Below are positions 5,510 through 47,035 of a stretch of DNA of 64,000 bases, piece by piece; within the stretch, counting starts at the first letter, position 1, and the number at the start of each line of letters is the position of its first letter. This DNA comes from Mytilus edulis. Taxonomy: Eukaryota. The notes under the pieces were generated by a model, which worked only from the letters and a program-made list of their open reading frames with translations, was not told the origin of the DNA and searched no databases. A program made the position numbers and the translations under genes. The stretch is from assembly GCF_963676685.1 (NCBI RefSeq), contig NC_092346.1:73284001-73348000 (forward strand), read 5' to 3'.

Positions 5510-5521
5510 TCAGTAGCCACC
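5510..5521 (-). CDS. Terminal coding micro-exon (Gly-Gly-Tyr-stop) of secreted Gly-rich protein gene 1
   Basis: Minus strand reads tattttcag|GGT GGC TAC TGA. Phase 0 matches the donor after ...CCT AAG|gtgagt at 6950. Same layout as the last exon of gene 2. Confidence 0.7.
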   Translation of the reverse strand, partial: GGY

Positions 5522-5722
5522 CTGAAAATAGATTGAATAAATAAATTGTATATAATTCGAGTATGAATAGAAGTTTAGTATATGTGGATTATGAAAAATT
5601 ATTATAGTTCATAGATACATGTACAAGGACCATAGAGAAACAATGGATTTTAATTAAAATGGAAAGATAAAACAACCGTACTTGCATCACCCCGTATTTG
5701 TCTTTAGTTATTGTACTATTTA

Positions 5723-6165
5723 GAATGAAATTCGAAACAGTGTGGCTGTGGCCATTGATTGACGCATTAAATTCATCCATTGACTGGGACAATTTACGTG
5801 AACGTTTGTCTGTAACGACCACTGTTCACGACGTACCTACGATAGACATTTAAACTGTGGGGTCACCAAAGGTTTCTTAACGCCTTTAATTATAAAATAA
5901 TTCGAAAAATTAATCAGGAATAACCTTTATGTTTTGATTTATATAATTGATATAAATCAAAACATCGTGTTATTTCTGATTAATTTTTCGAATTACTTTA
6001 TTAAGGTGTTGAGAACCTTTGGTGACCCCATAGTTTAAGTGTCTTTAAAAAGTACATAGTGAGCAGTGGTCGTTACATACAAACGTTCACTTAAATTGTC
6101 CCAGTCAATGGATGAATTTAATGTGTCAATCAATGGCCACAGCCACACTGTTTCGAATTTCATTC
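5723..6165. mobile_element. ~445-bp foldback MITE, copy 1 (TA target duplication)
   Basis: gaatgaaattcgaaacagtgtggctgtggcc...ggccacagccacactgtttcgaatttcattc is near-palindromic over its whole length, with TA on both sides. It lies in the last intron of gene 1 and is inverted relative to copies 2 and 3. Confidence 0.9.
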
Positions 6166-6949
6166 TATATCTTAAATTTGAAAATAAGTAATCATAAGAC
6201 CATTACAAGAATGCCTATATATATGACAAAAGTTACATGTACTGCTAATATCACGAACAACAAACACATAAACAGCGTAACATTCCCTGTGTAAATGTTA
6301 TTCTTTACATCCACTTCATTTGAACTCTGGTGGATAGTTATCTCATTGGCAATCATACTACATCTTCTTATTTCGATATAAATGTAGGACATTCAATGTA
6401 AAAGTCTCTGGGAAAATGACATTTAATCATTTCAAAGACATGTTAGACCGAAAACAATGGTCATTTTTATTCTTTGAATTTTTAAACGGTGTTAACAATT
6501 TTAGTAGCGTGAAGTCAAACAAGACGTTAATTTCAAAACCAAAACTGAAACTTTAAAGTAAAACAGTTGGATAGATGGATATCTGTTTAACGTCTAGTAA
6601 CAAATTAATAGCATATTCAGTTTTAGAACATGTTAGTGTGATATGAGCTCTGCTTTGTACTAGAAGACAGACTCGCTGAGGCGGTTTTATTTTTGCAGGA
6701 AGACATGACAGTCATACTAACCGGACACATTCTGACTCTGGGCCGAACAAATCTTTGCTCTTACTGCATAATACCATATGCTTCCCGGATAAGCACCAAA
6801 TACCAATTCACAGTTTTTGGTGTAACCTGGCTGGTAATAATTGATAATATTCTGTTCTATTTCTCAGCTTTTTTTTTTGCATTTTTCTCGGATACGGCAC
6901 TTTTTCTCTCACTATTGTATAAATTTATCAAATTCTTAATTTAACTCAC

Positions 6950-7762
6950 CTTAGGTAGCTTTTGTCCGTACTTCGTTCTTTTGCTGTATGGCTTTCTATT
7001 TTTCTCGCGACGTGACCTGCCATTATATCTATCATAAATCACATTTCTTGACCTATTATTTCTGCCTTGGCGACGATTATTAGATCTGCGCATGGGTGCA
7101 ACTCTCCCATTGGTTCCTCTATTAGCCATGTTGCCCATTCTTCCAACTCGGGGTGTATTAGGTGCGACCATATTAGCTGATCCTGATAATCTAATCCCGC
7201 CTCCACCACCAGCCATATTGCCCGATAATCTAACACTACCTCCACCACCAGCCATATTGCCCGATAATCCAACACTACCTCCACCACCAGCCATATTGCC
7301 CGATAATCCAACACTACCTCCACCACCAGCCATATTGCCCATATTACCAACCGGCCGGGAGGCACCAGATCTAATTATACCAGCCGCTCCCCTAGCCATG
7401 TTGTTCATTGGGTTACCCCTCTCTTCTGCTTTTACATAATCCTCTACGGGCTGATCTGGATCTACTGGAGCCATCGGATCAGGACTATTTGCCCTTGGTG
7501 TATAGGCTTGATCTCCAAACATCGGATCTGAAACACTGACTGTGTTAGGAGCTGGTCCTTCAGCAGCCATGCTATTCACAGAAGCATCAAAACCACCAGC
7601 AAAACCACCAGCAGAACGAGCCCTTTCAACAGCTCTATTTACAAAAGGATCAACAGCGCGATACTGATTATCAAAAGAGACACTCTCCCTTCCAACATTG
7701 TTGCCTCCTTGAGATCTAGCTGTTGTGATACAGAAGGAAACGACTACTATAAGAAGCTTCAT
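6950..7762 (-). CDS. Main coding exon of gene 1: secreted Gly/Asn/Met-rich low-complexity protein with Arg/Lys/Tyr-rich tail (~274 aa; putative shell, ligament or byssus matrix protein)
   Basis: 271-codon exon. N-terminal signal peptide MKLLIVVVSFCITTARS, four tandem 13-aa GNMAGGGGSV(G/R)LS-type repeats and a basic tail ...RKPYSKRTKYGQKLPK. Acceptor tacag lies directly before the ATG; donor gtgagt at 6949-6944. Confidence 0.85.
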
Positions 7763-10423
7763 CTGTAATACATAAATACATAATTGATTTCTAGTAAAAT
7801 TACGACCAAAAAGATCATATGCATTACCAGGAGGTCATAATTCTTCAATTATGCATGGTCCAACGAGATTTTGAGATGTTGCAATCTTGAATTCGGTGTT
7901 AAGCGTCTTTTTACAAATCTTAATATATAGTATTTTTAAGAAATATTAAAAAATATTATAACAAATATATATGTAAGTATGGAATAAACAATGATTGTCC
8001 ATTTTTTAGATAACTCAATAAAAAAAAGATATTGACTAGTTGGTTGTAACTATTAAGACTTTGAAAAAAATGCATGACGTATTTGCGATTTCACTTTTTC
8101 ATATGTCGTTTTATATACTTGAAGGTATAGAACCACTAATTCAGGCCTAGTCAGAAAGAACTTACAAGAAAGTAGTACATGTTTTAAAATAGTTCCTACG
8201 TATAGCTGTATCTCTGTCAATAGGGGGGATATTTGAGTAGTTTTTGTATCAAAAGAAATCTTGGAGACTTGGATAGCTGTAGAACCGTATTGAAATTTTT
8301 ATTTGAATAATAAAGAAGTATATGAAATTTGAATAGAAGGACACATTTGGCATGTTGTTCAGATCAGAAATTCCTGTTTTTGTTTTTGATAAGGTACAGT
8401 TTTGACATGAAATAACTGCCACTTTATTTAAACTTAAGACAAAGAAGCCATTATTGCTTGAGATCGAGATTTTAACATAGAAAGCTATGGGCTATGAGTT
8501 AGTGGTTTTATACCTTATTGAAACACATTTTTTATCTTCAAATAATTTCTTAATATTTGGAGCCAAAAATGACGTTTACCGAACTTACTTGGTTAATTAT
8601 TCAAATATAAAAGTGATTGTGCAATAAAATTATCTAATACATAGCCGATTGATAAATAATCAAATATATAGACAATGAATAAAGCCTCCAAAGTAAGTTT
8701 ATATGAACCTCAATATTGTTTGTTGCATTTTTTATATTTTACAATCCGTATTTCAAGTTAAGTTTCCGACAGTATTTAATTTGGAATGTTGCGTGCACGA
8801 ACTTTTCGATGTGATTTTATGGAAAATATAGTTAAATGCTTATTGATTAATCTCTTTATTTATGATTGTCAGTTGCTTCAGAATAGGTATCACTCTTTTG
8901 GACAAAATGTTGGGTACTGTTAACAGTTTCACACCCATAATGGGATTACTGCAATATTTTGTAAATGCAAATTTTTACTACGGTTATTCCAAAAACAGTG
9001 ACAATATTTCCCAATTTGAACTATAATAGGAAACGAAATCTTCGGACGATGATATACATATCTGAGTTTTCTCATTGGAACTCATACAATTTTTGTACCA
9101 CATCTTCTTATCTATATATTTACCCATACTTGACACAAACAGTAAGCTTTATTAAGTAATATTAAGTATATAACATTTATGACTGTTAGTTTAAAGTATT
9201 ATTTCTATCTGTGTATTGCTACCTAAAAATGTTTACAAAATGTTAAAGTAATCGAAATACTGTGGTGTTTGTCTGCCCTAGGCTTAATGCTCTTTAACTT
9301 CATATTTGAATCGGCCTTCAAAATATTTTCATTCGAGTCGCACTAATGAATGATAAGGTGTATACGAAACACAAGTCTGACATATCAAATTATAAGCTAA
9401 GTATCTTTTATGAGTTTTTGTTTTTTATTTAACCTGGTTTCAATAAATTTGATTAATTATCTCCGACTTCCTTATGTTCTTTCCTCTAGTGTGCAAAGTA
9501 TTGGTTATATGTGTTATGTGTTATTTTTCGTGCATAGATACTGTGAAATAACAGGTGATCAAACACACTTGATTCGCACCTGTCATTTCATGTCATTTCA
9601 CATTGATATTTAGTAACATGATTACTGATACCTAAAAAATCTTTTAAATTAAAATACCGCTTTATAAATTTAAATGAGAAATATCTAGCCTCTAAAATGA
9701 ATGTGGCAAAATTAGTGTGAAATTAAGCGTTACCTTTGTAGTTACAAAAAAATTTATATTATTATCGAAAACCATATAAAGACCAACAATTTTTTTTTGT
9801 AGACGATTTGATCGAAATTTAGACAGTGACAATGTTTCACCCGCCACATTAATTATAGTAGGTGTTTGTCCGAAGTCAGTAGGTTTTTCGTTTATCGTTA
9901 TATCTAGTACATAAATCAGGCCGTTGATTTTCTTGTTTTATTTGCACGATTTTTTTCATGACTGGTCTTTTATAGCTTACTAGGCGGTTTTGGTTTTGCT
10001 CATTGTGGAAGACTGTACGATGACCTACAGTGGCTAACATTTGCGTCATTCGTTCTCTGGATAGCTGTCTCATTTGCAATCATACCATATCTTCTTATTT
10101 TACATTCATTATTGTGCTCATATTTTTTTCTCTCTTCACTGCATCTATAAATTCAGTATCAAAACCCATCAAGCATTATTGATTGTAATGAACTCATTTG
10201 AAAAATACAAATTTAATAGAAGAAAGAAAGGACACTGTTGTAAGCAAATAAGAGCGGTACGAATTAAACATCATGTTAATACATAGTTTCTGATAAAAAA
10301 TATTAAAATAAAATATGTGGTGAATCGAAACAATAATTGTGGATTCGAATATTTTGTAAACTTTTGCAAAATTTGTTTATTATTATTTAACGAATTAAAT
10401 CAAAAGCAGAAATAAAAACTTAC

Positions 10424-10504
10424 AGTTTGTGCAGTGCTGTATTTTAAAAATTTGTACCATGAAATCACACTTTTGCAGAAAGGTACGTTGATGAATCATT
10501 TATA
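10424..10504 (-). promoter_or_regulatory. Candidate TATA box and non-coding first exon of gene 1
   Basis: Minus-strand TATAAAT at 10504-10498 and a gtaagt donor at 10423-10418. The acceptor directly before the gene 1 ATG implies an upstream non-coding exon, but other donors are possible. Confidence 0.35.
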
Positions 10505-12940
10505 CAATAATAAGTTTTTAAATCGTGATAAAAATATAAATGATACGAAAACAATGTTATTAATTCTTGTCAATCATATATTTATTACAAAACAAACACA
10601 TAAATTGAAAGTTTATTTGAGGAATATTAAAACTCAAAAATTATAGCGAAGACAAATGTCGCATATCTAAAACTTGTTAATGACTGTACTATGTGCATAA
10701 AACTAAAAGTATTTAGTTATTCCTTTTAATAGTTTCAAGATAATTGTATTGGTAAAAAGGAAAGAATGAAGATAAAAAACTGTTTTCTTGTTACATAATC
10801 ACATGTAAATATAATGAAAGCACAAAGATGAATTAATGGTATACTAAAAGTTTGATGATAACTGACAGGAACCTCAAACAGAATAATTACATTGAACATA
10901 CTAAATGACGTTTGTATACTTGTCTGATAAATAGATTATATCAGATGGCTCTTCACAATATCAAATCCGAATCAACCGAAAACACCGATTGAATCTCAAA
11001 AGCTAACCAAGGCCGTATATGAAACACTTTTTAAGGTCTGATAACGTGTGTAATATTTGCAGACACTGATCAATCATTGTGTCGGAATTAATTCTATTTT
11101 TTTTTTAAATAGTGTAGTACGTAGACATTGTGGTGACATCATCACCGTGGAAACTTTTTATGTTTAAGCTTTGTAAAATTTGACACGTAAAAAACTTATG
11201 TCGGTAATAAATTTTAATTGTTGGAATACTCAGTAGTTGTTCGAAGTCGCAGAGAGTCTATCGGCATATAGTATATCAATGGAAATGTTGGAATGATATA
11301 CATCTATGAAATAGAAATCTAAAGGAAAGGAATTTAAAGATACAGAGATCATTAAATATGCAAACGCTAAATATAGACTGGTGTCTATACAACAAAGCGA
11401 ACGCATTGGAAACTAATCTCAAAGGTTAAGAGATTCCAAAAGGAACAATGCCGCACAAAAAAAACGTCTTTTGTGTCTTAAAAACATATACTTTTGAAAT
11501 TTTTCCATGTGAAGCTTAAATATGCAAAGTTGTAAAAGGACAATTATTACTGTTAATATAAGAATTATTTAAAGTATAATTTCCTTTGGTTATATTTACG
11601 TGGTATAATTAAAGAATTCTTGTTTGTCTTATTAATAAGCAAACATGGCTTCAAGACTACGGTGTGCTATTAAATCATCAATTTAGACTGATATTTTAGT
11701 TATTGAATTTTGCCATACACTTTACTGACTTTGGACATGCACATTCAGAGTGTGGAGAGGTTATACATGTTTGAAGGAGGACAACCCCCTTAACCTAGGA
11801 CTCTCACTTAACAGCACAGTATAAGAACAAAAAAAAAAAAAAAATCAAATGAAGATGGTTTTACTCATTGTTCGAAAAAGCATAAGAATTAACTAACTAA
11901 AAAATAAAGACAAGAAGTACAGACCTGTGAGTTTTCGCAGTTACACGTACTTAAAGCAAATTCAGAGATAATAAAATCGCATATCTAAGTCTTAGATATC
12001 AACCAGTACACACATCCAACTTACATTATGGTATTTCAAATGCAGTTTTTTTTTCTTCTCCTTAAAATGGGCTTACCACTAACCCGCTTATTAATTTCTA
12101 AATAATTTTCCACAATATAGGATGCAGAATAAAACAGAAAATGTGTCAAAGAGACAACAACCCGAACAATAAGTCTAGATTAGTAGTGGGGATGATGGTG
12201 CTCACGTTAAACTGGTTTAATGGTATCAAGTTAATAGTTGATGAAAACAACTGGAAGATGCAAACAGCATGAAAAAAAAATAATCGTGGTATCCTTCTCT
12301 CTCCATATCAGTAGAATGAATACAACCACTTCATTAACAGTTGAACAAGACACTATAGTCGCAATGGGCAATGACAATTTTTCTTTTGTTTTAATTTGGA
12401 AAGAGATAGTTTCAGATGTTTTCATCAATATTTCAAAATATTTGTCCATATTTAATATATTCTAGATCTTTTAACTATAATCTTACAATAACAATAGTAG
12501 TTTTTACGTATTTTCCACCAGGGAGGTAAGATCCTATTTTCAAATATCGCACCACTGCGCATTCCTCTCGCGTAATGAATGTACCCCGTTTCCATCAACT
12601 GATAAAAAACAAACTTTTTCATTTCTTTTTGTATTTTGTGTATGAAATCAAACAGCTATTCAGAAATTTAAATTATAAATTCGTAGTGGCTTCAATTTTC
12701 GTAACATGATTATAAGATGTGATACGATTGTCAATGAGACTAACTTTTAAATAGAGACAAAAATAAGAAGAGGTGATGTTCATTTCTGATGACAGAATTA
12801 AATGTCTGACGTAAGTTCGGCTCAACGTGTCATAAAGTAGACTCATTCTGCATTATATGTAAACCCGAAGTTCGAAAGGTGTTCATGTTTAGACAGGTAC
12901 AAACGTCGATTGATCTTGCATATGACTATTACATTTGTTA

Positions 12941-13384
12941 GAATGAAATTCAAAACAGTGTGGCTGTGGCCATTGATTGACACATTAAATTCATCCATTG
13001 ACTGGGACAATTTAGGTTAACGTTTGTATGTAACGACCATTGCTCACTGTGTACTTTTTAAAGACACTTAAACTATGGGGTCACCAAAGGTCCTCAACAC
13101 CTTAATAAAGTATTTCGAAAAATTAATCAGGAATAACACGATGTTTTGATTTATATCAATTGTATAAATCAAAACATAAAGGTTATTCCTGATTAATTTT
13201 TCGAATTATTTTATATTTAAAGGCGTTAAGAAACCTTTGGTGACTCCACAGTTTTAAATGTCTATCGTAGGTACGTCGTGAACAGTGGTCGTTACAGACA
13301 CACGTTCACGTAAATTATCCCAGTCAATGGATGAATTTAATGTGTCAATCAATGGCCACAGCCACACTGTTTTGAATTTCATTC
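12941..13384. mobile_element. ~445-bp foldback MITE, copy 2
   Basis: Same sequence as 5723-6165 in the opposite orientation; TA at 12939-12940 and 13385-13386. Confidence 0.9.
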
Positions 13385-13654
13385 TATTCCGTCAACCAAA
13401 ATAGACTACATGAAAATATGAGCAAATGATGAGGGAAGATTTGAAATTCTAGATAGTTGAGTTATATTTAATATAAATTGTACCAAGAAATATTGATAAG
13501 CTGTTCATTGAACAATCTGAAAATGAATGAGCTATTTCAATGGCATTAAAGCAACCTATTTATTCACTGAATTTTTACGGATAATGACAATACCATGCAG
13601 TTAATTATGACAAATACTTTAAATGCATTTTTACCTCTAAGCTGGAAAATAAGA

Positions 13655-24273: not shown

Positions 24274-24406
24274 TAAAGGCAACAGTAGTATACCGCTGTT
24301 CAAAACTCATTAATCCAAGGACAAAAAACAAAATCGGGGTAACAAACTAAAAACTGAGGAAAACGCTTAAATATAAGAGAACAACGACACAACATTAAAA
24401 TGTAAC

Positions 24407-24463
<57 letters not shown>

Positions 24464-29489: not shown

Positions 29490-30391
29490 CCAATGGGAAC
29501 AAACTGTGCCCCTCTACTTGCCGACTTGTTTCTTTATTATTATGAGGCTGACTTCATGCAGGAACTTCTTAGGAAGAAAGATAAGAAGTTAGCAATATCC
29601 TTTAACTCTACTTTCCGCTATATAGATGACGTTCTTTCACTAAACAATTCAAAATTCGGTGACTATGTGGAACGCATCTATCCCATCGAATTTGAGATAA
29701 AGGATACTACAGATACAGTTAAGTCGGCTTAATATCTTGACTTACATCTAGAAATTGACAATGAGGGTCGGTTGAAAACAAAACTTTACGACAAAAGAGA
29801 TGATTTCAGCTTTCCAATTGTGAACTTTCCATTTCTAAGTAGCAACATTCCAGCAGCACCTGCATACGGGGTATATATCTCCCAATTGATACGATATTCC
29901 CGTGCTTGCATTTCCTATCATGATTTTCTTGATAGAGGGTTACTGCTCACAAGGAAGCTATTAAACCAAGAGTTCCAAATGGTGAAGTTGAAATCATACC
30001 TTCGTAAATTTTACGGACGCCATCACGAGTTGGTTGACCGTTATGGAATAACCGTTTCACAAATGATATCGGATATGTTCCTTACGTCGTAACTACAATC
30101 CCCTTCCCTTTCATGAATGTGACCTACCGAATTAAGACTATTTACCGGATTTGTAATCACATAAGCAACACGACGGGTGCCACATGTGGAGCAGGATCTG
30201 CTTACCCTTCCGGAGCACCTGAGATCACCCTTAGTTTTTGGTGGGGTTCGTGTTGTTTATTTTTTAGTTTTCTATGTTGTGTCATGTGTACTATTGTTTT
30301 TCTGTTTGTCTTTTTCATTTTTAGCCATGGCGTTGTCAGTTTGTTTTAGATTTAGGAGTTTGACTGTCCCTTTGGTATCTTTCGTCCCTCT
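29490..30391 (+). mobile_element. 5'-truncated Penelope-like retroelement (RT core and thumb, no C-terminal endonuclease; Naiad-type layout) with 3' UTR
   Basis: One frame at 29490-30092: PMGTNCAPLLADLFL...FRYIDD...YLDL...LYDKRDDF...GVYISQLIRY, with a single premature TAA at 29730-29732. TTTACTAC is duplicated at 29482-29489 and 30392-30399. Confidence 0.8.
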
Positions 30392-30559
30392 TTTACTACA
30401 AGAATCGTTCTAGATTTGTGAATGAACAAAATCACAGCTTCGGCAATCGTCTCGAAAAAAGTTTGTTGGCCACTTCCTTCGAATGTACTAGGAGCGGATT
30501 TGATTGAGAGACTACAGTTGGCTAATGCATTGTTAAATGTTGTAGAAAAATTAATGACG

Positions 30560-32221
30560 TCCTCTCAGAAATGAATAAAGATAAACAAATTGATGACGAT
30601 ACGTACGATTATCTACGCCAAGACGAAACTTGCACAGCCGGTCGATTTTACGTACTTCCAAAACTCCACAAAGAAGGGATTCCAAGGAGGCCTATTGTAT
30701 CAGCTAATGGCCATTCCACTGAAAATTTCTGAATTTATTGATTACCACCTTAGACCACATGCTAAACAACTACATTTCATATTCAAGATACAACTGACTA
30801 TTTGAAGAGAATGAAGTCCTTAAGTCCTTTACCTAATGGCACACTTTTGGTTTGAATGGATGTGTGTTCTTTATACACAAATATTCCAAAAGACGAAGGA
30901 ATAGGCGCGTGTGAAAAAGTATGGAACACTCGAAAGGATAAACATCCCAAAACTGACTGTCTAGTTCAATTGCTCAAGCTAGTGCTTGAAAATAACAACT
31001 TTATTTTCAACGACAAGCACTTTTTACAGATTGACTAGTATGGGAACAAAAATGGCACCTTTTTTTTTACCAATATTTTTATGGGGGATCTCGAAGAACG
31101 CATCCTTTTGAGTGTGCCATACAAACCCTTATCATGGCTCCGTTTTATTGATGATATTGACATGAAATGGAACGATACTGCAGAACATTTACAAGATGTC
31201 TTAGATCATTGCAATCAGTTCCATCACTCAATTAAATTTACATCTGAATTTTCAAGCGAGAAAATTGCTTTCCTCGACACCACCTCATTTGTAAAAAACG
31301 GGGTAATGACAACTGATATCCACACAAAGAAAACACCAGTTCCTTTCTCCAAAAACCCGAAACACTGCTCCAGGAGGATACCTTACAGTCAAGCCATCAG
31401 ACTAAGACGAATTTGCTCCTCGGACTCAAAACTGAACTATCGTTTGGGACAACTAAAAACACAACTGAAATCAAGAGGATACAAGACCAAAAACATCACA
31501 GACGGTTTTGATAAAGCCCAAGAAAAAGATCGAGATAGCCTCATGGAATACAACGATGATACGACCCGTGCAGATAGAATTCCGTTTGCTGTCACCTTCC
31601 ATCCCGATTTGACAAATAGTTCATTTACTATCCGCAAGCTCTGGCGTCTTATCAAAGATGACTCTTCCTTAAAAGAAATTTTTCCATCCCCACCTATTAT
31701 TGCCTAATGCAGACCCAAAAATCTCAAATACATACTTGTGACATCAAAAGTAAAAAACAAGAAACTTCTAAATTTGGGTGTTACAAACAATGCGGTAGAA
31801 GCAATTGTAGGTGCTGTAAAGCCACCAACACTGACCACTCATTCAGCAGCACAGTAACCAAGCAGCGATACAACATATATGGTACATCTAATTGCAAAAC
31901 GGAAAATAGAATTTATGTTCTTACTTGTGGACATGCAAGCGGCAGTATGTTGGTGAAACAGAAACTAAATTCAACATCAGACTTAACAATCACCGATCGT
32001 TTTATACAAAAGGAAGAAACTGTCCAATAACGAGACACCTGTTAAGAACAGGACATACTTTTGATAATATCACCTTTCAAATAATTGAGGTAAACCAAAA
32101 TTGGAACTCCAAAAGGAGAAAACAGAGAGAAAGGTCCTGGATGCATCAGCTACGTACTGTTGAACCTGATGGACTTAATGAGAGGGAGGAAAAACAGTTC
32201 TACCCAAAACCAAAGGAATAA
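30560..32221 (+). pseudogene. Decayed Penelope-like retroelement pol: RT, Cys-rich linker and C-terminal GIY-YIG endonuclease
   Basis: Frameshifted fragments: MDVCSLYTNIP, WLRFIDD, FLDT, IPYSQAIRLRRICS, IPFAVTFHP, CGRSNCRCC, IYVLTC/CKRQYVGET...RLNNHRS...ERSWM...PDGLN. Confidence 0.88.
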
Positions 32222-37147: not shown

Positions 37148-37191
37148 GCGTCGCTGATGAGTCTTTTGTAGACGAAACGCGTGTCTGGCGT
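37148..37191 (+). ncRNA. Type I hammerhead ribozyme motif (isolated retrozyme-family copy)
   Basis: gcgtcg-CTGATGA-gtct(tttgt)agac-GAAA-cgcgt-GTC-tggcgt; catalytic core intact, predicted cleavage after 37185. Confidence 0.75.
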
Positions 37192-39751
37192 AAATACATA
37201 ATTTAGTCTTGGTTTATTCACATCTTCGGTACTTTTACACCTTTGGTTTTGAGTGTTCCTGAGGAAGGTTGATCTTATAAAGCGCTTCGATAGCATGACA
37301 ATAAGATTCATTTTAAAGATCTTGGTCGTAACCGCTTATGGTGGACTATTACATGTGGTTCACAATGGTATCACCAGGTCAGTAATAAGTACTTCGATAT
37401 TGACAAGTTCTGTAACAAACCTTCTTTAAGTTCCCCTTGATAAATTGAGAAACTATTATGAAACTAAGGTAACAACTATCACAGAAAAAGTTGATCTTAG
37501 ATGCAATTGGCTATAATTTTAGATCGCGTTGGTTATGTTGTATGAAAAAACTATCTGCCAGAGTTCAAATGAAGTAAATTTAAGCAATTATAAACAACCA
37601 TACGACCTTAAAAAACCCCACATATATTCGGCTATTCAAGGCCCGGACATGAAATATGTAAACAGTAGACAATTTAAACGAGAAAAACTAACGGCCTAAT
37701 TTATAACAAAACATTTAACTAAAAACACATAACCAACTACAACCACTGAACTACGGACACCTGACTTGGACAAGCTCATAAAAATTGTGGCGTGGTTAAA
37801 CATGTTTGTGAGATTTCAACCATCCCCTAACCTGTAACAGCGGTGACATAACATCATGAAAAACAAACCGTAACAATCAATTGCTAGTGACTGAACTCAT
37901 ATATCACTACGTGAAAAAAGAATAAAAAAGATACCGAAAATTTCAAAAAGGGGTTGATGGTGTGTGTTGGTTGACAAAGTCGAAATTTAGGAATTAACAG
38001 ACTGCTTGTGTGATAAACATCTGTTATATTGCAGAAAAAGTACAGGCATTTCACCAAGAAAATGGTGGATTCATCCTGGTTTTGTAGTTAGCTTAACCCC
38101 CCACTTGTATGACATTTGGTTATAGTTCGGTTATATTGACTAAAAAAGAAACATACATAATAGGTTGATGTGAACATAATTTGGACCAAGCAGCCAAATA
38201 TTTTTAAACGTACATTACAGACTTGCAACACAATTGACTTTAAAAAAAACCAACTAGTTTTACATTCATATCGTTCTACGCTTTATTATCGGTAGCTCAT
38301 AAAAGGTTTGAATTAAAGTCATAAACAGTAGAGAAAAGTCCTTCTGCAAAGCCAAAAACAGACTATGAAAAATTTCAAAGCAGCAAAAACACAGGAAACA
38401 TTTTAAGTCTTGCTTTAAAAATATTTTCCACCAAGAAAGTGGAATAAAACAGAAATAAGACTTTTTCTTTACTTTTTGTATTTCTACGTTGTTGTTTATG
38501 TGAATTTAAGTAAAAGGGTATAAAGTGACTGCACCTGGGATCCACATATTTGTATCATTGCAACATCTCAGCTTCTAGACTCGTCATGAAATCTACAGGT
38601 TCATTCTATATATATGCATTGAGTTCGCTACATAAAAAAAAAACTGTTGACAAGTAGCACATAATAACTTACATCAACACAAAAGACACAAAGTATCGAG
38701 CTTAGAGTACTCGCAACTACTGAAATTTTATTTAAAACGAGACCCATTGGTGGCCTTTGGCCATTTTCTGTTCTTTGTTCGGGTTGTTATCCCTTTCATA
38801 CATTGCCTATTTCCATTCTAAATTTAATTTACATAATTTCCACGAAATGATTCTGTTCTCAGATTTTTAAATTTAATGTTCTTAAACTTGATAAAAATTA
38901 AAATGTTCTTACGTGTAGCATAGATAGTCGAAAAGTCATAGCTTTGGGACATTTTACGAATATAAAGGATCACCAAAAGATAGTATATTTCAAATAAAAC
39001 TGAGAATTGAAATGGGAAATATGTCAAAGAGACAACGACCCGACCAAAGAGCAGAAAACAGCCGAAGGCCACAAATGGGTCTTAAACACGGCGAGAAAAT
39101 CCTGTTTTCGGAGGCGTTCTACAGCTGGCTCCTAAAGAAAAATGTGTACTACTAATAGTTCAATAATAATGAACGTCAAAAGCTCGTTTGCTAGTATTTC
39201 GTGCAAAAATGATTTTTGTCAAAACAAATAAAAGCATTTAAAAATAAAACTAAAAAACAAATATAAGGAGTTATATCTGAGTTTCTGTATGTATAATGAC
39301 AAACAGTATCGAGTTTACAACTTTGGTCAGTATCTATCAGATGTTGAAAAAATTCCTGAACCAGAGGAGATTGATGCGATTGATGATGAAACTGCAGTTA
39401 CTGAATAATTACATTGATAACTAAACACGTGCTTTCACTTTGCTGGAATTACATTTGAACATGATCGTAGATTTGTATGCTGCATTGAAGACCTGTTGGT
39501 GACCTTCTGCTGTTGTCTGTTCTATGGTCGGGTTGTTGTCTCTTTGACACATTCCCCATTTCCATTCTCAATTTTATGGTTGTCAGCTTGCATACCTCAT
39601 TTGAGATACAGTTTCATAAACTATCCAATTGAAATTGAATAGACTTTTTAGATATTGGTAATGAAAATAAAGTTTATTACTTAATGCAGAAGATCTTGTA
39701 TTATTTACATAAATAAAGGCAACAGTAATATACCGCTGTTTAAAATCCATA

Positions 39752-40198
39752 GAATGAAATTCAAAACAGTGTGGCTGTGGCCATTGATTGACACATTAAA
39801 TTCACCCATTGACTGGGACAATTTATGTGAACGTTTGTATGTAACGACCACTGCTCACTATGTACTTTTTGAAGACACTTAAACTATGGGGTCACCAAAG
39901 GTTCACAACACCTTAATAAAGTAATTCGAAAAATTAATCAGAAATAATTAACACGATGTTTTGATTTATATCAATTATATAAATCAAAACATAAAGGTTA
40001 TTCCTGATTAATTTTTTGAACTATTTTATAATTAAAGGCGTTAAGAAACCTTTGGTGACCCCACAGTTTAAATGTCTATCGTAGGTACGTCGTGAACAGT
40101 GGTCGTTACAGACAAACGTTCACGTAAATTGTCCCAGTCAATGGATGAATTTTATGTGTCAATCAATGGCCACAGCCACACTGTTTTGAATTTCATTC
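39752..40198. mobile_element. ~445-bp foldback MITE, copy 3, inserted into an older interspersed repeat
   Basis: Same family as 5723 and 12941. Excision restores aaatcca-TA-aatcgattgag, matching the uninterrupted host at ~25486-25505. Confidence 0.9.
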
Positions 40199-42646
40199 TA
40201 AATCGATTGAGAAATAAACAAATCCGTGTTAAAAACTAAAACTGACGGAAACACATCAAATATAAGGGGAGAACTCTTAAACTCATAAAATGAAAAAAAA
40301 TTTACAAAAAGTGCTAGATATTTTTGATATTTGATGTACTAAAAACATTTACCTGTAAATCTCGAAAAATAAATAAAATACTCATTTCAGAACTTAGTTT
40401 ACACCAGAGTCAAATTTTACTAATGTATCTAATAATGATAATATGGAAACTGTTCCTCGATATTCTTATTTTGGTTTCTTGTAAACAAAGTTTTTTTTTA
40501 TAACAATGCAATGGCAAAGGCAGTACCCAAACCTGCAAGTACGTCACTATGTGTGTTGTTTAGCGTATGAAAGTTTTCAATTTGGTACATTTTCAAACCC
40601 TTTAAATCACTTAAATCTATTTTGTGGTTTGTGGTTTTGTGTTTGCCTTTTTGTCTTTTTTTTTTTGACATTGCTTTATCTGTTAATTCGTCGACTTAAA
40701 TGTCCCTTTGGTATTTTTCGCCTCTGTTTCATGTCAGCTGATCTCTTCGTCGTGCTAAAAAATGCTGATATATTTTCATGATCGTATTTCTTATAAAAGA
40801 TTTGCCAACATTTTTTCTATCTTGATTTGATACACATTTACCACATTTTTATACGGAATGATTAATTAGTCAAAATGTCCTTCCTTACAATAATTGCTTG
40901 AACCAAGTTAGTGGTTACTATAGCTTTCAATTCAAAATCAAGAAATGAATGATTTATAAAATATTATTTCAAAATAATTGCATTGCATGTATGTTTCATT
41001 ATAATACGTTGACTCACAGCAATCTCGCGACATTTTGAAATGAATTCAAAATGAAATGTAACATTCATGATGACAAGTGCTTCTACAATAAAGTTAACAG
41101 CTAAATAAAAGAAAAAAATGATAGGAATCGTGTTTCATGATCGTAGCTAAAAGAATAATTATAAGTATATTTTGACGGTGCACACATTTTGAAAATGAAG
41201 CGCTTCAAAATGTACTTCTTTTTACACCTATATGAATTTACAAAAAAGAAGCATTCAATTCGTAAATAAAAACACCGCATGAACACTTCATTTCAGTGGG
41301 TTTTGTTTTATAAATCTTGATATAATCTCATTTCCTGCTTACCATGACAACCACATCTTAAAGATGCATTCACATATAATAATTACCGTTTTATGATCAA
41401 TAACTCATCCTTTCTATAGTATCAGAATTCTCAATCGTGCGTCAAAGTTACTGCAAAACTACATGTATCCAATATGGGCGTTGCGAATGATATGTGATAT
41501 CTATCAAATCTTTCTAGTTTTACTCATTACAGTAAATATACTGATGATACCGCAAATCGAAAAATGTAAATGACCCATGATTATGGGACCACTTTTCCTA
41601 CAATAAAAGTCACACGAAGTATTTAGAGTATTATCACAAATATTGAGAGGACATTTACAAAAATTAAGAGTATTTTCTCAAATATACAAGGTATACAAAT
41701 ATATTTAGAGTATAATCACAAACATGTAAAGAATACAAAAAGAGACACTACATCAACAATTTAAAGAGTTTAAATCAACAAACTACAGTAAATGCCCCCC
41801 CCCCCCCGTCACCTTCATCGAAGAGGCTCGTTGTCGAGAAATAAAGAAAACGTTGCGATAGCGACACTCAAGGACTGTTAACAAATGACAATTCCAGACC
41901 CAAGAATCAACATAAACTCTTATATTTAAGCTAAAACAAAACAATACAAACACACAATGAAACAAATTTTGTTAAAAAATGCAATAGTAGTATATCGCTG
42001 TTCAATGGTTACATGTAACATCTTATTAAGATAAAATACAAAACTATGATTAAAAATTGATACAGATGATTGTGGTGTAACTATCTTCTGATCATGTACA
42101 CTATTACAATATAAGTCTTACATACTGTTTGATAATCGAAAGAACTGTATCGATCTTCCAGTTATTTCATTAAGTCATGTTATACAGAATGCGAAAAAAA
42201 GTACAGACACATTTGCCTTTTAGTCAGAACCGTAGATTTTAATTTCCCTCAAAAAGTAATAAATGACAAAAATGCAATTAAACATTAAAAATAGTCAAAA
42301 GTAATTTTGAAGTAAAAGAAGACAAAGTTTGATTATAGTTAAATTAAAAAGCTGTGGTAATTTTGTACTTATGAACTGGATGTATCCTACATTTCAATTC
42401 AATAAAAATAAAACTAATTTACACATCATAATGAAATTAACATAACAAAAAAAGTACAATTGCAACATGTTATAAAGACAAATATTCATAAAACATTTGA
42501 AATGTTTACTAATAAGCTCATTGATCAATTAGGAAGTGATAATAATATTTGTTATGAATTTAAATTGTACATAAGAAGAATATGCGTTTTATGATTGATC
42601 ATCAAATTACGAAATTGATGGATGTGAAAATCAAATGTTGGTATGG

Positions 42647-42711
42647 TATAAATAAGTGTTCGAGAGAGAGGAGAGGACAGACCTGAAAGATTCCGGATCT
42701 TAGCAAGCTAG
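42647..42711 (+). promoter_or_regulatory. TATA box and short non-coding exon 1 of gene 2
   Basis: TATAAATA at 42647-42654 and a donor AG|GTATGT at 42711/42712. The acceptor ttgtag ends at 43386, just upstream of ccaccATG. Confidence 0.6.
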
Positions 42712-43401
42712 GTATGTACAGCACTAACAGTCCTAGAATATTATTTTTTACTGTCGTGTTTAAAACAGTAAAAAAAAAATTAACTTTAACTGTGTTTATT
42801 AAATGCGTTTTTTTATACTAAAATTGAAATTTATAAAAATATCTGCTGTATCAGATATTATCCGACTTTGTCTGTTTTTATAATGTTCCTACGTTTGAGG
42901 TTTTTGTGAAATATTCATTTACTTAAAGTCTTTTGTTGAATTTAATAGTATTAACAGCATATGAAAAACGAAGCAGAACGAAATTTTATTTTAAAATGAA
43001 TTATTTTTTTTCTTTTAATATCTGGACAGAATTATAATCTCAGTACATACCTTTATTGATCTCACTTTGACACTGTGGATGTTTGTCTTCATTTGAGACA
43101 TTACACAATCTGATAAAAATAACCATACTGTGTCAAATCTTTGCCGACAGCAATCTGAATACGCTCTTTCGGAATACTCTAGTTTTGTCGAATTAAATCA
43201 AACCTTTACAAATTGGAAGGCTGAAATTTCATTGGCTTGTGTAATAATTATCTAAACATGAAAGTACATGAGATAAAGAATTGTAAAGTTTTGTACCACA
43301 CTAAAATCTTACAAAGACAGTAGAACAAGCAATTTCTGCTCCGTTGGTATTTTATGTCGTTCATCTTGTATTTAATAATATTGTAGGTCCAGCATACCAC
43401 C

Positions 43402-44817
43402 ATGAAGTCAATTATCTGTTTAATATTTGTTTTCATCGCCGTAAATGCTGCTGGTAAAAGGAAATATTATCCTCAACCATACACCGGCGGGAATGGCTAC
43501 ACTGGTGCTGGAAATATGTACAGTGGAGTAAACGGTTACAGAGGTGCACCAAATGGTTATACTGGTGCACCTGCTGGCTACACTGGTGCACCAGCTGGCT
43601 ACACTGGTGGAGCACCTGCTGGATACACTGGTGGAGCACCTGCTGGATACACTGGTGGTGCACCTGCTGGATACACTGGTGCAGCACCTGTAGGCTACAC
43701 TGGTGCACCAACTCCCTATGTTGGTGCACCAACTCCCTATGTTGGTGCCCCTAATGTATACACTGGTGGTAACGCTGGTGCACCTGGAGGCAGTGGTGGT
43801 GCTAGCTACATGCCAGTGGTAAATGGTTATCCTGGTAATGTTGCTCCTTATGACCCAACTGTAGGGACCGGAAGTGGAGCTCCATATGACCCAACTGTAG
43901 GGACCGGTAGTGGACAACAAGGACAAGGAGCTAGTGTAGATGTTGGTAAATTGTTATCAGCTCTCGTTAATGTACTCGTAGAAAGCAAAGAAAAAGCTCC
44001 CGAACCAACATACAACGGAGCAGTAAATGGACCTGCTTATGACCCATTGGGTCAAGGAGGTGCTGGTGGACAAATGGGTGCAGGAGGTGCTGGTGGACAA
44101 ATGGGTGCAGGAGGTGCTGGTGGACCTGCTTATGACCCAATGGGTGCAGGAGGTGCTGGTGGACCAATGGGTCCAGGAGGTGCTGGTGGACCTGCTTATG
44201 ATCCATTGGGTCAAGGAGGTGCTGGTGGACAAATGGGTGCAGGAGGTGCTGGTGGACAAATGGGTGCAGGAGGTGCTGGTGGACCTGCTTATGACCCAAT
44301 GGGTGCAGGAGGTGCTGGTGGACCAATGGGTCCAGGAGGTGCTGGTGGACCTGCTTATGATCCATTAGGTCCAGGAGGTGCTGGTGGTCCAATGGGTCCA
44401 GGAGGTGCTGGTGGACCTGCTTATGACCCATTAGGTCCAGCAGGTGCAGGAGGTGCTGGTGGACCTGCTTATGACCCATTAGGTCCAGGAGGTGCTGGTG
44501 GACCAATGGGTCCAGGAGGTCCTGGAGGTGATAGACCAGCAGCTGGTGGACCAGGTGGCCAACCCGAGCCTTGTGACCCTGCTGATCCATACTGTCAAGA
44601 GCCATGTGATCCTAATGATCCATACTGTCAAGAACCATGCGACCCTAATGTTGAATACTGTGGTGGTCCATGCGATCCAAATGACCCTGCTTGCCAACCC
44701 GATGTTGGTCCAGTCAATGGTGACTTAATGCCATATGATGGTCAAGGTGGTCAAGGTGGTCAAGTTGGTCAAGGTGGTCAAGGTGACCAAGGTGGTCAAG
44801 GTGGTTATAATGGTTAT
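43402..44817 (+). CDS. Gene 2 coding exon 1: secreted Gly/Pro/Ala/Tyr-rich repetitive structural protein (~542 aa in total; silk/elastomer-like, putative shell or byssus matrix protein)
   Basis: Kozak ccaccATG; signal peptide MKSIICLIFVFIAVNA; GYTG(G)APA repeats; GGAGGP(M/AYDP) repeats; four CDPxDPxC-type units; GQG repeats; phase-0 donor TAT|gtgagt at 44817/44818. Confidence 0.92.
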
Positions 44818-45158
44818 GTGAGTAATACTTTAGTTTTCTTCTGTAGTCATTTTCGTTAATACATTTTTATTTTTTTATTTTGTGAGTTCATAAAACACGT
44901 AACGAAAAATTGAAATACTATCACTAGAATTTATGTTGTAATATCAACTTTAGTAAGTACTTTGAGCAAATCGTTAAGGTAACCATAGAGGGACCTAAAT
45001 TGAACTAAAAAAGAGTAAATCATGTTATTCAGTCATAGCATTTGTTGACAGATGTTAAAATGAGACAAACATAATTATTTGTGATAAACCATCTATTTGC
45101 ATACGCCATTGGCCCAACAGTTCAGTTTCTGATTTGTAAAATGATTTTTATTTCGCAG

Positions 45159-45218
45159 GAGTCAAATGGAGATAAATATGGAAACAACAATAAATACGCT
45201 AAAAAATATGGCGGCTAT
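45159..45218 (+). CDS. Gene 2 coding exon 2 (ESNGDKYGNNNKYAKKYGGY)
   Basis: tttcgcag| ... |gtaagt; 60 bp, phase 0-0, open frame, Lys/Tyr/Gly-rich. Confidence 0.85.
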
Positions 45219-45489
45219 GTAAGTTTAAATTCTTGTCATATTTTGATATAATTTTGAAGTTACTTTTATCGAAACACTTTAAATTAATGATGAAATTACA
45301 ATACTAGAAAGCATACGTGTATGTAAATATTATAAAGATAAAATAAAACAAACCAAAAAACAAAAAAGAAACAGAAATAAGATCAATATTTACGATAATT
45401 GTTTTGTACAAAACTATGAGAGAACTGCATTGTTTCTAATGTTTTATTTTTTCTATATGACTCATCATTGATTTTATCTACTGTTGCAG

Positions 45490-45609
45490 GGTAAGAGAAC
45501 CACAACTACACCTAAACCATACGCTAAACCATACGGTAGATCATACAAGAAAAAACCAACAAGAAAACCATATGCAAAGACATATTACACTAAAAGATAC
45601 AACAAGAAG
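45490..45609 (+). CDS. Gene 2 coding exon 3 (GKRTTTTPKPYAKPYGRSYKKKPTRKPYAKTYYTKRYNKK)
   Basis: gttgcag| ... |gtaagg; 120 bp, phase 0-0, open frame. Confidence 0.85.
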
Positions 45610-46008
45610 GTAAGGACTATTTGATAATTATGAACAATGATCGCCATTTAAAGTTTTATATAACGAAGATTCACAATTTATTATATTTTTTCAATTGCAT
45701 TAATGACCTTTTTTTAAATTCTTGGATACATTAAGGATGTTAAGCAGAAATCTTTTTAAAAATACAATGATATACCTTCAATTCTATAACGATGTATAGA
45801 ACATTATCTAAGAAAAATAATTCTAAAATAAAACCGACAAGAGTATTTTACAAAAAAGGCCGGCACGTCAATTTAATTTTGGACAAACACAAGACAATCA
45901 TTACCGGAATTTTAGCTAAAACAAATCTAAAGATGAACATTAATTTTTGAAGTGCAAATTTGTAAATATTTATTAAATTTTTTATTTTATCGATTTTATT
46001 TATTTCAG

Positions 46009-46029
46009 CCTTATGCACCAAAACCAAAG
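46009..46029 (+). CDS. Gene 2 coding micro-exon 4 (PYAPKPK)
   Basis: tatttcag| ... |gtaagc; 21 bp, phase 0-0, continues the KPY motif. Confidence 0.75.
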
Positions 46030-46161
46030 GTAAGCGAATTCGTTGTGAATTATTTTATTCAACAGCCTAATATCGTTAAAACATTTATGTAATTTAATTT
46101 AAACAATGTTATAATATTTTTTTATAACTAATAACCAATATTCTCAAATACAAGGAAATAT

Positions 46162-46550
46162 AGATTCCGCAACTGCAACAAGTGTATTACGATATTTCTC
46201 CACTCGAGACAGTTAAATTTTAATATTTAATATTTAATATTTAAAGCGCGAGGCTTTTTAAATAATTAAAATTTAACTGTTGAGAGTGGAGAAATATCGT
46301 AATACACGAGTTACGGTGGTGGAATCAATCACGTGGAATCAATATCTCTAATGATTTTCTTTTTCTTTTTCAAAGATTTTTTTATGACGTCACAATAAGA
46401 AAATTCAGAAGAAAACAAGAAAATATAACGTCACAATTAAATTTCAACCAATAATTTGCCGAGAACAGATTTTTCACTAGTGAGGAGAAATATTTTTATC
46501 ACACCGGCCAGGAAATGTGAAAATCGCACAAAAATTAGAGAAATAACAAG
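46162..46550. mobile_element. Non-autonomous element with a long internal hairpin, in the last intron of gene 2
   Basis: gtgtattacgatatttctccactc..acagttaaattttaat (46182-46224) is inverted at 46266-46307. Confidence 0.55.
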
Positions 46551-47023
46551 ATTGCTGTAACAAACAAGCAATTAAAAACGAAATGCACAAAACATTTAAC
46601 ATGACGTATAAGGTTGACGACCAAATCGTATTCATTTGTAGTTTTAAATATGCCAATAATGGCAGTCGGGTGAGGGTGGGAATTTGTCTTTATTGTCAAG
46701 AACATTGTGATTAAATAAATATCTAACTTCATTCATGAATGTTCATGAGTTGAAAAAAAACTAAAAGGTAGTGGTGTGTAACTTTTGCTGCTCAGTGGAT
46801 ATACACATGTACCTGAAAACAAGAAAATGTGAGCAAATAATTTCAATTTCATGCACACACTAGGACAAAAATTTACATGCAAATGTGTAATGTGCCGAAA
46901 ACGTGTGTTTTCAATCTCTCCTACTAATGTCTTTATAACTAACCAAAATGATTATTTGGAGAAATAAAAGTATCATGTTGTGTTATTGACTGAAATAAAC
47001 TGACTTTTTCATTATCTTTTCAG

Positions 47024-47035
47024 GGTGGATATTAA
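47024..47035 (+). CDS. Gene 2 terminal coding micro-exon (GGY-stop)
   Basis: tcttttcag|GGT GGA TAT TAA; AATAAA poly(A) signal at 47093-47098. Confidence 0.8.
   Translation, partial: GGY

What the first reader, a model, noticed from the sequence alone, without database searches (positions are those of the whole stretch)
5510..47035. Two divergently oriented secreted Gly-rich genes share a hidden 'PK | GGY-stop' terminal micro-exon: a candidate undescribed structural-protein family
Seen: the two proteins are unalignable by eye over most of their length, yet share one plan. Both have a splice acceptor just before the ATG, one large exon with signal peptide plus Gly-rich Met-containing repeats and DP motifs, and a basic Tyr-containing tail with RKPY(S/A)K. 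Both then have a phase-0 intron after Pro-Lys and a last exon coding only GGY-stop (ttttcag|GGTGGCTACTGA at 5521-5510; ttttcag|GGTGGATATTAA at 47024-47035). The ORF track misses both micro-exons. Known: molluscan shell and byssus low-complexity proteins (shematrins, KRMPs, mussel foot proteins) often have basic Tyr-bearing C-termini, and their Tyr can be converted to DOPA. Inference: these are ancient paralogs whose repeat cores turned over while a C-terminal PKGGY tag (cross-linking, sorting or anchoring signal) was retained.
Basis: partly seen in the sequence, partly recalled or inferred. Interest (0 to 1): 0.85.

Follow-up and report, generated by a model that had tools for sequence, protein, structure and literature searches.

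The report
Mussel structural genes sharing GGY end
Two neighbouring mussel genes for secreted, repeat-rich structural proteins both end in the same tiny last exon (Gly-Gly-Tyr, stop), and that exon marks a ten-gene family on one chromosome whose members are otherwise too repetitive to align.

Summary
An acceptor followed by GGY and a stop occurs only twice in the 64-kb window (about 0.01 expected), each time downstream of one of the two Gly-rich genes. For gene 2, single RNA contigs from two studies cross all four GT..AG junctions, including 46029>47024, and one ends in a poly(A) tail. For gene 1, annotated orthologues in four Mytilus species end in KGGY. Correction: gene 2's basic tail lies in three extra phase-0 mini-exons, not in the large exon.

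A whole-genome search extends the finding. Nine of 16 strict pattern hits lie on the window's chromosome. With one TAG-stop copy, ten genes share one plan:
- an acceptor just before the ATG;
- a large exon coding a signal peptide and Gly/Tyr-rich repeats;
- a phase-0 intron after a mostly basic tail residue (K, R or P);
- a terminal exon coding only GGY and a stop.

None of 20 pattern hits checked elsewhere has such a gene upstream. Only third codon positions and the stop codon vary, so the conserved unit is a basic tail plus GGY, not PKGGY.

Function is inferred: tyrosinase-tanned extracellular material (periostracum, byssus or shell matrix). One family member matches the composition of the unsequenced periostracin. 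The closest analogues are shematrins and KRMPs. Tissue and protein chemistry remain untested.

The parts
6950..7762 (-). Gene 1, main coding exon (271 aa). It codes a signal peptide, Gly/Met/Asn repeats, DP motifs and an Arg/Lys-rich tail ending ..LPK. The donor gtgagt follows at 6949.
   Evidence: orthologues at 62-90% identity
7763..7764 (-). AG of a candidate acceptor (tattacag) directly before the gene 1 ATG.
   Evidence: Sequence only. M. californianus and M. coruscus models carry an upstream coding exon joined just before MKLL.
5522..6949 (-). Gene 1 last intron, 1428 nt, phase 0, gt..ag.
   Evidence: inferred from orthologue models ending KGGY
5510..5521 (-). Gene 1 terminal coding micro-exon, GGY-TGA. 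The 3'UTR continues downstream; a candidate ATTAAA lies at 5311-5306.
43385..43386 (+). AG of a candidate acceptor (attgtag), 15 nt before the gene 2 ATG.
   Evidence: Sequence only. No joint was reported here.
43402..44817 (+). Gene 2 exon 1 (472 aa). It codes a signal peptide, GYTG(G)AP repeats, G/A/P/M repeats with AYDP(L/M)G, a four-fold CDPxDPxC block and GQG repeats.
   Evidence: RNA contigs cover it, with in-frame repeat-length variants
45159..45218 (+). Gene 2 exon 2 (20 aa), ends ..KKYGGY. Phase 0 on both sides.
45490..45609 (+). Gene 2 exon 3 (40 aa). It starts GKR and is Lys/Tyr/Pro-rich, with RKPYAK.
46009..46029 (+). Gene 2 exon 4 (7 aa), PYAPKPK.
47024..47117 (+). Gene 2 terminal exon: GGY-TAA (47024-47035) plus 3'UTR. 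AATAAA lies at 47093-47098 and poly(A) is added after 47117.

Best explanation
The two window genes are expressed members of a family of at least ten genes, all on one Mytilus chromosome, coding secreted low-complexity structural proteins.

All ten share one inherited gene plan: a 5' intron ending a few bases before the ATG, one large coding exon (signal peptide, Gly/Tyr-rich repeats, acidic DP motifs, basic Tyr-bearing tail), a phase-0 intron after the last tail residue (K in eight genes, R in one, P in one), and a last exon coding only Gly-Gly-Tyr, the stop and the 3'UTR.

Shown: the plan itself, its restriction to these genes, splicing of gene 2, and KGGY ends in gene 1 orthologues.

Inferred, step 1: the intron shields the C-terminal tripeptide from the slippage and unequal exchange that keep rewriting the repeat exon. 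The end therefore stays recognisable while the bodies become unalignable.

Inferred, step 2: the peptide itself is under selection. The six non-degenerate bases are invariant in all ten genes, while third positions and the stop codon vary and the flanks are close to random identity.

Inferred, step 3: a C-terminal Tyr on a flexible Gly-Gly spacer beside basic residues serves as an exposed tyrosinase substrate (DOPA/quinone). It would link chain ends when the secreted material is tanned, in periostracum, byssus or shell matrix.

My odds: family by descent about 0.85; selection on the peptide about 0.6; cross-linking role about 0.35.
For: - Pattern counts. Window: 2 observed against 0.01 expected. 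Genome: 16 strict hits (reversed-pattern control 12), of which 9 lie on chromosome C3, which is 7.8% of the genome. Six of these form a tandem array. A tenth gene has a TAG stop.
- Every C3 hit has, 0.6-2.8 kb upstream on the same strand, a signal-peptide ORF ending in K, R or P directly before GTAAGT-like letters in phase 0. Most are Gly/Tyr-rich (12-49% Gly). Each also has an acceptor shortly (0-24 nt) before the ATG.
- Control: 0 of 20 hits elsewhere have such an ORF.
- A search with exon 1 of L010 retrieves all six array genes, and all six have the GGY exon. Every other match I fetched (9 places) was satellite or collagen-like.
- Gene 2 splicing and poly(A) are shown in two studies.
- Gene 1 orthologues in four species end in KGGY while the preceding residues change.
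- Coding positions 1 and 2 are invariant. Third positions read T/A, C/A/T and C/T. Stops are TGA, TAA and TAG. Flank identity between subgroups is 0.33-0.36 against 0.28 random.
- End similarities beat composition-preserving shuffles.
- The proteins are mostly basic and Gly/Tyr-rich.
- Shematrins and KRMPs also end in basic residues plus Tyr (PMC3896809). Periostracum is tanned through Tyr/DOPA by tyrosinase (PMC3821031, PMC5105077).
Against: - Ascertainment. Seven of the eight extra genes were first found with a pattern that demands GGY plus a stop. Relatives with another end would have been missed.
- BLASTP finds no significant similarity between the subgroup bodies. Common descent therefore rests on architecture, linkage and short end similarities.
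- AAG|G at the junction is also the favoured splice-site context, which explains part of the K|G conservation without any protein function.
- No RNA was laid on gene 1 or on the eight other genes. Intermediate mini-exons like those of gene 2 cannot be excluded there.
- Tissue of expression is unknown because run labels are coded. One run holds gene 1 but not gene 2.
- There are no protein, DOPA or cross-link data.
- Gene 1 has little Tyr and only 18% Gly.
Confidence: 0.55

Rival explanations
1. The last intron and 3' exon are kept for RNA-level reasons: expression enhancement, 3'UTR control, or keeping the stop codon in the last exon so the mRNA escapes nonsense-mediated decay. On this view the three codons are a passive remnant with no role in the protein.
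For: The coding part of the last exon is only 9 nt. The junction AAG|GG is an ideal splice context. Within the array the 3'UTRs are alignable. The scan notes another family in this genome with tiny conserved terminal exons (note s1-832280, unchecked).
Against: RNA-level constraint does not predict that exactly the non-degenerate codon positions stay fixed while third positions and the stop codon vary. Between subgroups the 3'UTRs are near random identity. Exon 2 of gene 2 also ends in GGY, directly before a GKR site. That hints that the peptide end matters.
Confidence: 0.2
2. Basic residues plus GGY form a sorting or processing signal rather than a cross-link site. The signal would direct packaging into secretory granules, or mark cleavage after the basic residues so that GGY is removed.
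For: Seven of the ten tails end in two or more consecutive basic residues before GGY (KK, RK, KRK). Gene 2 has an internal ..GGY-GKR.. that looks like a convertase/amidation site (scan note s1-834998).
Against: Three members have PK, KP or SR instead of a dibasic site. No known sorting motif of this form was found in what I searched. Nothing was tested.
Confidence: 0.15
3. The shared end is chance, convergence, or a shuffled exon cassette captured by unrelated genes. On this view the genes are not paralogues.
For: The bodies cannot be aligned. Low-complexity tails resemble each other easily.
Against: The window count is 2 observed against 0.01 expected. Nine of 16 genome hits lie on one chromosome, each with the same three-part plan, against 0 of 20 controls. 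End similarities exceed shuffles.
Confidence: 0.05

Closest known systems
Shematrins (Pinctada prismatic-layer framework proteins)
   Same: Secreted Gly/Tyr-rich repeat bodies that evolve fast, with a short conserved basic C-terminus ending in Tyr (PMC3896809, PMC4897951).
   Different: Their signature is RKKKY, RRKKY or RRRKY, not a basic tail plus GGY. I made no sequence comparison and could not read their gene structure because the key paper is not held. Here the end sits on its own micro-exon.
KRMPs (lysine-rich mantle proteins, Pinctada)
   Same: Small, basic and secreted, with a Gly/Tyr (GGY-type) domain thought to cross-link and a C-terminus ending in basic residues plus Tyr (PMC3896809). 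The 9.5-kDa array member L008 has this general look.
   Different: The defining Lys/Trp N-terminal domain is absent. The KRMP C-termini are RKYKY, RPKKY or RRKY. The window genes are 27 and 50 kDa.
Periostracin of Mytilus edulis (purified in 1979; sequence reported as undetermined in PMC3821031)
   Same: Periostracin is a 20-kDa basic protein with 55% Gly, 10% Tyr and 2.2% DOPA. Array member L009 is predicted at 20.7 kDa, pI 9.1, 49% Gly and 16% Tyr.
   Different: The match is by composition only. It concerns a relative 16 Mb away, not the window genes (gene 1: 18% Gly; gene 2: 50 kDa, acidic overall). Tissue is unknown.
Byssal thread matrix proteins and Lys/Tyr/Pro-rich foot proteins of Mytilus (from my own knowledge, not tested)
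   Same: The Gly/Tyr/Asn-rich composition with many Asn-Gly pairs (L006 and L007: 26 NG each) recalls thread matrix proteins. The K/Y/P tails of gene 2, L005 and L012 recall mfp-1-type repeats.
   Different: No reference sequence was available for comparison. Peptide-string and accession searches of the paper library found nothing.

Membership tests
Shematrin | Signal peptide plus Gly-rich repeats with Tyr or hydrophobic residues | tested here: met
   All ten genes have hydrophobic N-termini and Gly-rich repeats. The signal peptide was judged by eye; no predictor was available.
Shematrin | C-terminal signature RKKKY / RRKKY / RRRKY / PRKKY (PMC3896809) | tested here: not met
   All ten end in GGY preceded by PK, RK, KK, SR or KP.
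Shematrin | Detectable sequence homology to Pinctada shematrins | not tested
   No shematrin sequence was in hand. Database searches with gene 2 and L010 returned only spurious low-complexity hits.
KRMP | About 10 kDa with a Lys/Trp-rich domain directly after the signal peptide | tested here: not met
   Gene 1 is 26.7 kDa and gene 2 is 49.8 kDa. There is no Lys/Trp domain.
KRMP | C-terminal RKYKY / RPKKY / RRKY | tested here: not met
   The ends are a basic tail plus GGY.
Periostracin | 20 kDa, basic, about 55% Gly and about 12% Tyr+DOPA (PMC3821031) | tested here: not met
   This is for the window genes: gene 1 has 18% Gly and gene 2 has 29% Gly with pI 5.3. The relative L009 comes close (20.7 kDa, pI 9.1, 49% Gly, 16% Tyr).
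Periostracin | Present in periostracum and secreted by the periostracal groove | not testable with these tools
   Run and sample labels are coded. No proteome was searchable.
GGY-terminated family defined here | Terminal exon coding only GGY plus a stop, behind a phase-0 intron that follows the last tail residue (K, R or P) | tested here: met
   Both window genes meet it, as do eight further genes.
GGY-terminated family defined here | Acceptor a few bases before the ATG and a signal peptide at the start of the large exon | tested here: inconclusive
   Present in the sequence of all ten genes. No RNA joint into 43387 was seen for gene 2.

The most novel reading that the evidence does not exclude
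The GGY-terminated family supplies the precursors of tyrosinase-tanned mussel materials. It would include the gene for periostracin, purified in 1979 and, in what I could search, never sequenced. The exposed C-terminal Gly-Gly-Tyr would be the site where tanning starts, linking chains end to end. Gene 2 would be a two-product precursor cut at GGY-GKR, so that both the acidic body and the released Lys/Tyr-rich peptide end in GGY.
Probability: 0.2. Interest if true: 0.75.

Novelty: new variant of a known kind. Interest (0 to 1): 0.55.

Why it matters
Repeat-rich secreted proteins of shells, periostracum and byssus evolve so fast that families are hard to define, and they are often missed by annotation. 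Here a 12-base last exon works as a family tag where alignment fails. It tied ten genes together, including an expressed 542-residue protein (gene 2) for which an exhaustive search of public protein representatives found no counterpart.

The tag gives three concrete handles:
- a search pattern usable in other mytilid genomes;
- a defined C-terminal peptide to look for, with or without DOPA, in tanned materials;
- a shortlist of candidates for periostracin.

If the tripeptide proves functional, it would be a minimal end-group design for cross-linked protein materials.

Tried and rejected
- Gene 2 exon 1 in protein databases. The word-indexed search found nothing. The exhaustive phmmer search gave 25 hits, all spurious repeat matches, none ending in GGY.
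- L010 exon 1 returned only collagen-like hits.
- Own-genome searches with gene 1, gene 2 exon 1 and gene 2 exon 3 found only themselves, plus one weak repeat match on C11.
- BLASTP between subgroup bodies gave nothing significant.
- Weaker own-genome matches to L010 and L005 on C1, C3 and C4 were satellites in open frames or collagen-like genes. I rejected them as family members.
- Pfam found no family for seven members.
- The paper library returned nothing relevant for accession numbers, LOC names or peptide strings. The paper on shematrin/KRMP evolution is not held.
- A putative gene 2 5'UTR exon behind a TATA-like box (about 42650-42712) had zero depth in all runs. I dropped it.
As a result 37 of the 57 pattern hits outside the family, including the seven strict hits not on C3, were never inspected.
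Exons were searched and translated one by one, and composition was summed exon by exon.
Full report
What is in the window

Gene 1 lies on the minus strand. One ORF (7762..6950, 271 codons up to the donor) codes a hydrophobic N-terminus, Gly/Met/Asn repeats, several DP motifs and an Arg/Lys-rich tail ending ..RKPYSKRTKYGQKLPK. It is followed directly by gtgagt. An acceptor ttttcag lies 1428 nt downstream, followed by GGT GGC TAC TGA at 5521..5510.

Gene 2 lies on the plus strand. Its ORF starts at 43402 and runs 472 codons to a donor at 44818. It codes a signal peptide, GYTG(G)AP repeats, G/A/P/M repeats with AYDP(L/M)G, a four-fold CDPxDPxC block and GQG repeats. It lies in three phase-0 mini-exons:
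- 45159-45218, 20 aa, ending KKYGGY;
- 45490-45609, 40 aa, starting GKR and containing RKPYAK;
- 46009-46029, PYAPKPK.

The terminal exon is 47024-47035, GGY-TAA. The two genes face away from each other, 35.6 kb apart. Between them I saw only retroelement-like ORF fragments. The window has no N.

Is it more than chance?

A pyrimidine-AG acceptor followed by Gly-Gly-Tyr and a stop occurs exactly twice on both strands of the window. Both copies lie downstream on the sense strand of the two Gly-rich genes. Two hundred shuffles give 0.01 such sites per window.

Are the micro-exons used?

I had one call for laying reads and used it on gene 2, because gene 1 already had outside support. In two contig sets from different studies (X1 and X4), a single contig crosses all four joints: 44817>45159, 45218>45490, 45609>46009 and 46029>47024. 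Each joint is GT..AG. In X4 the contig runs into a poly(A) stretch after 47117, 19 nt past an AATAAA at 47093-47098. These runs are labelled RNA only by guess, but a fully spliced, polyadenylated form at high word depth is a transcript.

The same contigs show in-frame repeat-length variants: 136 nt replaced by 22 at 43505-43642, and a 9-nt insertion after 44771. This shows the repeat exon is unstable while the 3' exons match without a single difference.

For gene 1, the protein search returned orthologues at 62-90% identity in M. galloprovincialis (two models), M. trossulus, M. coruscus and M. californianus. All end in KGGY: LPKGGY, QPKGGY or QRKGGY. Two contig-derived ORFs end in ..PKVS, which is what an intron-blind ORF caller gives on unspliced DNA. 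About 40% of the sampled words of 5450-7800 are held by 14 probable RNA runs. That is the share expected for exons alone, but it does not settle which last exon is used. So the gene 1 junction is supported by annotation in four species, not by reads that I saw.

A family, not a pair

I searched the whole assembly for four pyrimidines, AG, GGN GGN TAY and TRA. There are 16 hits (reversed-pattern control 12). Nine lie on the window's chromosome C3, which holds 7.8% of the genome. They are the two window genes, one at 49.61 Mb, and six in a same-strand array at 57.29-57.36 Mb. A TAG-stop version added one more at 49.60 Mb.

Each of these eight sites has, 0.6-2.8 kb upstream on the same strand, a single large ORF. 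It begins with a hydrophobic signal-like segment, continues as low-complexity, mostly Gly/Tyr-rich sequence (12-49% Gly; Gly/Tyr/Asn or Gly/Tyr/Ala/Thr repeats in the array genes), and ends in ..SYGKK..SYGRK..SYGSR..SYGKP..SYKKRK or ..INKK. The donor follows directly, in phase 0. Each also has an acceptor 8 to 24 nt before the ATG.

Twenty pattern hits from the looser pattern lists on other chromosomes and elsewhere on C3 served as controls. None has such an ORF within 6 kb.

A search with exon 1 of array member L010, which does not depend on the last exon, retrieves all six array genes. Of the other matches, the nine places I fetched proved to be satellites read in open frame or collagen-like genes. 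The rest, mostly weak repeat matches on C11 and C12, were not inspected. L012 also appears as a weak exon-1 match to L005.

How related are they?

The ends do better against composition-preserving shuffles:
- The first 45 residues of gene 2 match each array gene. No shuffle in 2000 reached the score for five of the six. The alignment runs through V(N/Q)AAGKRxY into the first GY repeats.
- Gene 2 exon 3 matches the K/Y/P tail of L005 (p=0.007).
- The gene 1 tail matches gene 2 exon 3 (p=0.014; BLASTP E=0.006) and the L005 tail (p=0.012).

Signal peptides share a generic layout, so the N-terminal test is not clean. Even so, gene 2 against L005, L012 and gene 1 gave p=0.2-0.6, so the layout alone does not produce significance.

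Together with linkage on one chromosome and the identical three-part plan, common descent is the best reading. Gene 2 looks composite: an array-type N-terminus joined to an L005-type tail.

The conserved unit

The residues before the junction are PK, PK, RK, SR, RK, KP, KK, KK, KK and KK. The constant part is therefore a basic tail plus GGY, not PKGGY. In the nine coding bases, positions 1 and 2 of every codon are identical in all ten genes. Third positions read T/A, C/A/T and C/T, and the stops are TGA, TAA and TAG. Between subgroups the adjacent intron and 3'UTR are at 0.33-0.36 ungapped identity, against 0.28 for random sequence. This is the pattern of selection on the peptide.

Two caveats apply. 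Most members were found with a pattern that requires GGY. And AAG|G is also the preferred splice context, which accounts for part of the K|G conservation.

An independent hint comes from gene 2. Exon 2 also ends in GGY, directly before GKR, a convertase/amidation-type site. If the protein is cut there, both products would end in GGY. This matches a first-stage note on the same exons (s1-834998). I confirmed the exons by RNA but not the processing.

What they probably do

Predicted mature proteins range from 9.5 to 58 kDa. Most are basic (pI 8.9-11.2), the array genes have 34-49% Gly with 14-17% Tyr, and none has a Pfam domain. Gene 1 is Gly/Arg/Asn/Met-rich with little Tyr. Gene 2 has an acidic Gly/Pro/Ala body and a strongly basic Lys/Tyr/Pro tail.

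This is the make-up of secreted, tanned structural materials of bivalves. Shematrins and KRMPs of pearl oysters are Gly/Tyr-rich, evolve fast in their repeats, and keep short basic C-termini ending in Tyr (PMC3896809, PMC4897951). Mytilus periostracum is hardened through Tyr/DOPA by tyrosinase (PMC3821031, PMC5105077).

Array member L009 (20.7 kDa, pI 9.1, 49% Gly, 16% Tyr) comes close to periostracin, described as 20 kDa, basic, 55% Gly, 10% Tyr and 2.2% DOPA. PMC3821031 reports its sequence as undetermined, and none of the five papers in the library that mention periostracin gives one. L006 and L007, with 19-25% Asn and 26 Asn-Gly pairs each, recall byssal thread matrix proteins from my own memory. 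I could not test that.

Tissue is unknown because run labels are coded. One run holds gene 1 but hardly any gene 2, so the two are not strictly co-expressed.

I commit to this reading: a family of precursors of tanned extracellular material, with the GGY end as an exposed Tyr for enzymatic oxidation and chain-end linking. The family part is well supported. The chemistry is inference.

Known or new?

The kind is known: fast-evolving repeat proteins with conserved termini. The membership tests for shematrin and KRMP fail on their defining C-terminal signatures, and for KRMP also on the N-terminal domain. Gene 1 orthologues are already annotated with the GGY end but are named uncharacterized or given an automatic misnomer. 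Gene 2 and the array gene I searched with (L010) found no counterpart in the protein libraries. No paper in the library holds their peptides or accessions.

I found no description of a three-codon terminal exon used as a family hallmark across otherwise unalignable genes. The scan has an unchecked note of another mussel family with tiny conserved terminal exons (s1-832280), so the theme may be wider in this genome. I rate the finding a new variant of a known kind, of moderate interest.

Limits

Noticed in passing
window 46032-46655 (inside the last intron of gene 2): This stretch has very high contig and read depth in all four runs, including the run that lacks gene 2, with many variants and loose ends. 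It contains a long inverted repeat around 46160-46330. It is most likely a dispersed, transcribed repeat element and not part of the gene.
   Followed up: partly
window 43505-43642 and 44771: RNA contigs carry in-frame repeat-length variants of gene 2. In two studies, 136 nt are replaced by 22 nt (net -114 nt). In one study there is a 9-nt insertion after 44771. This is evidence of ongoing repeat turnover.
   Followed up: partly
window 45210-45218 / 45490-45498: Exon 2 of gene 2 ends in GGY and exon 3 starts with GKR, a convertase/amidation-type site. Cleavage there would leave two products that both end in GGY.
   Followed up: no
window 43068-43379: There is moderate contig depth just upstream of gene 2 exon 1 in X1, X4 and also X9, which does not express gene 2. 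It is probably a repeat or another transcript. The real 5' exon of gene 2 was not found.
   Followed up: no
window 51424-54023, minus strand: Exons of an ankyrin-repeat gene. Pfam Ank/Ank_2 matches reach E=1.9e-07.
   Followed up: partly
window 29493-32221, plus strand: A run of ORF fragments with reverse-transcriptase-like YxDD motifs, judged by eye. They gave no Pfam hit at E<=0.01. It is probably a decayed retroelement between the two genes.
   Followed up: partly
window 54595-55453: A first-stage note (s1-834827) proposes a tandem hammerhead retrozyme here. An Rfam scan of the whole window at gathering thresholds returned no match at all. This is not proof of absence.
   Followed up: partly
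L009 (G000:C3:57331246-57331989, minus): The predicted mature protein (20.7 kDa, pI 9.1, 49% Gly, 16% Tyr) closely matches the published composition of periostracin from M. edulis. PMC3821031 reports its sequence as undetermined.
   Followed up: partly
G000:C2:102348399-102356729: A satellite with a period of about 128 bp holds 31 copies of the loose GGY-stop pattern. It is a false-positive source for such scans.
   Followed up: no
G000:C12:46.89-46.96 Mb and C11:53.45-53.50 Mb: These regions hold clusters of long Gly-rich open frames (up to about 970 aa) that weakly match the array protein L010. They may be other structural-protein families. I did not inspect them.
   Followed up: no
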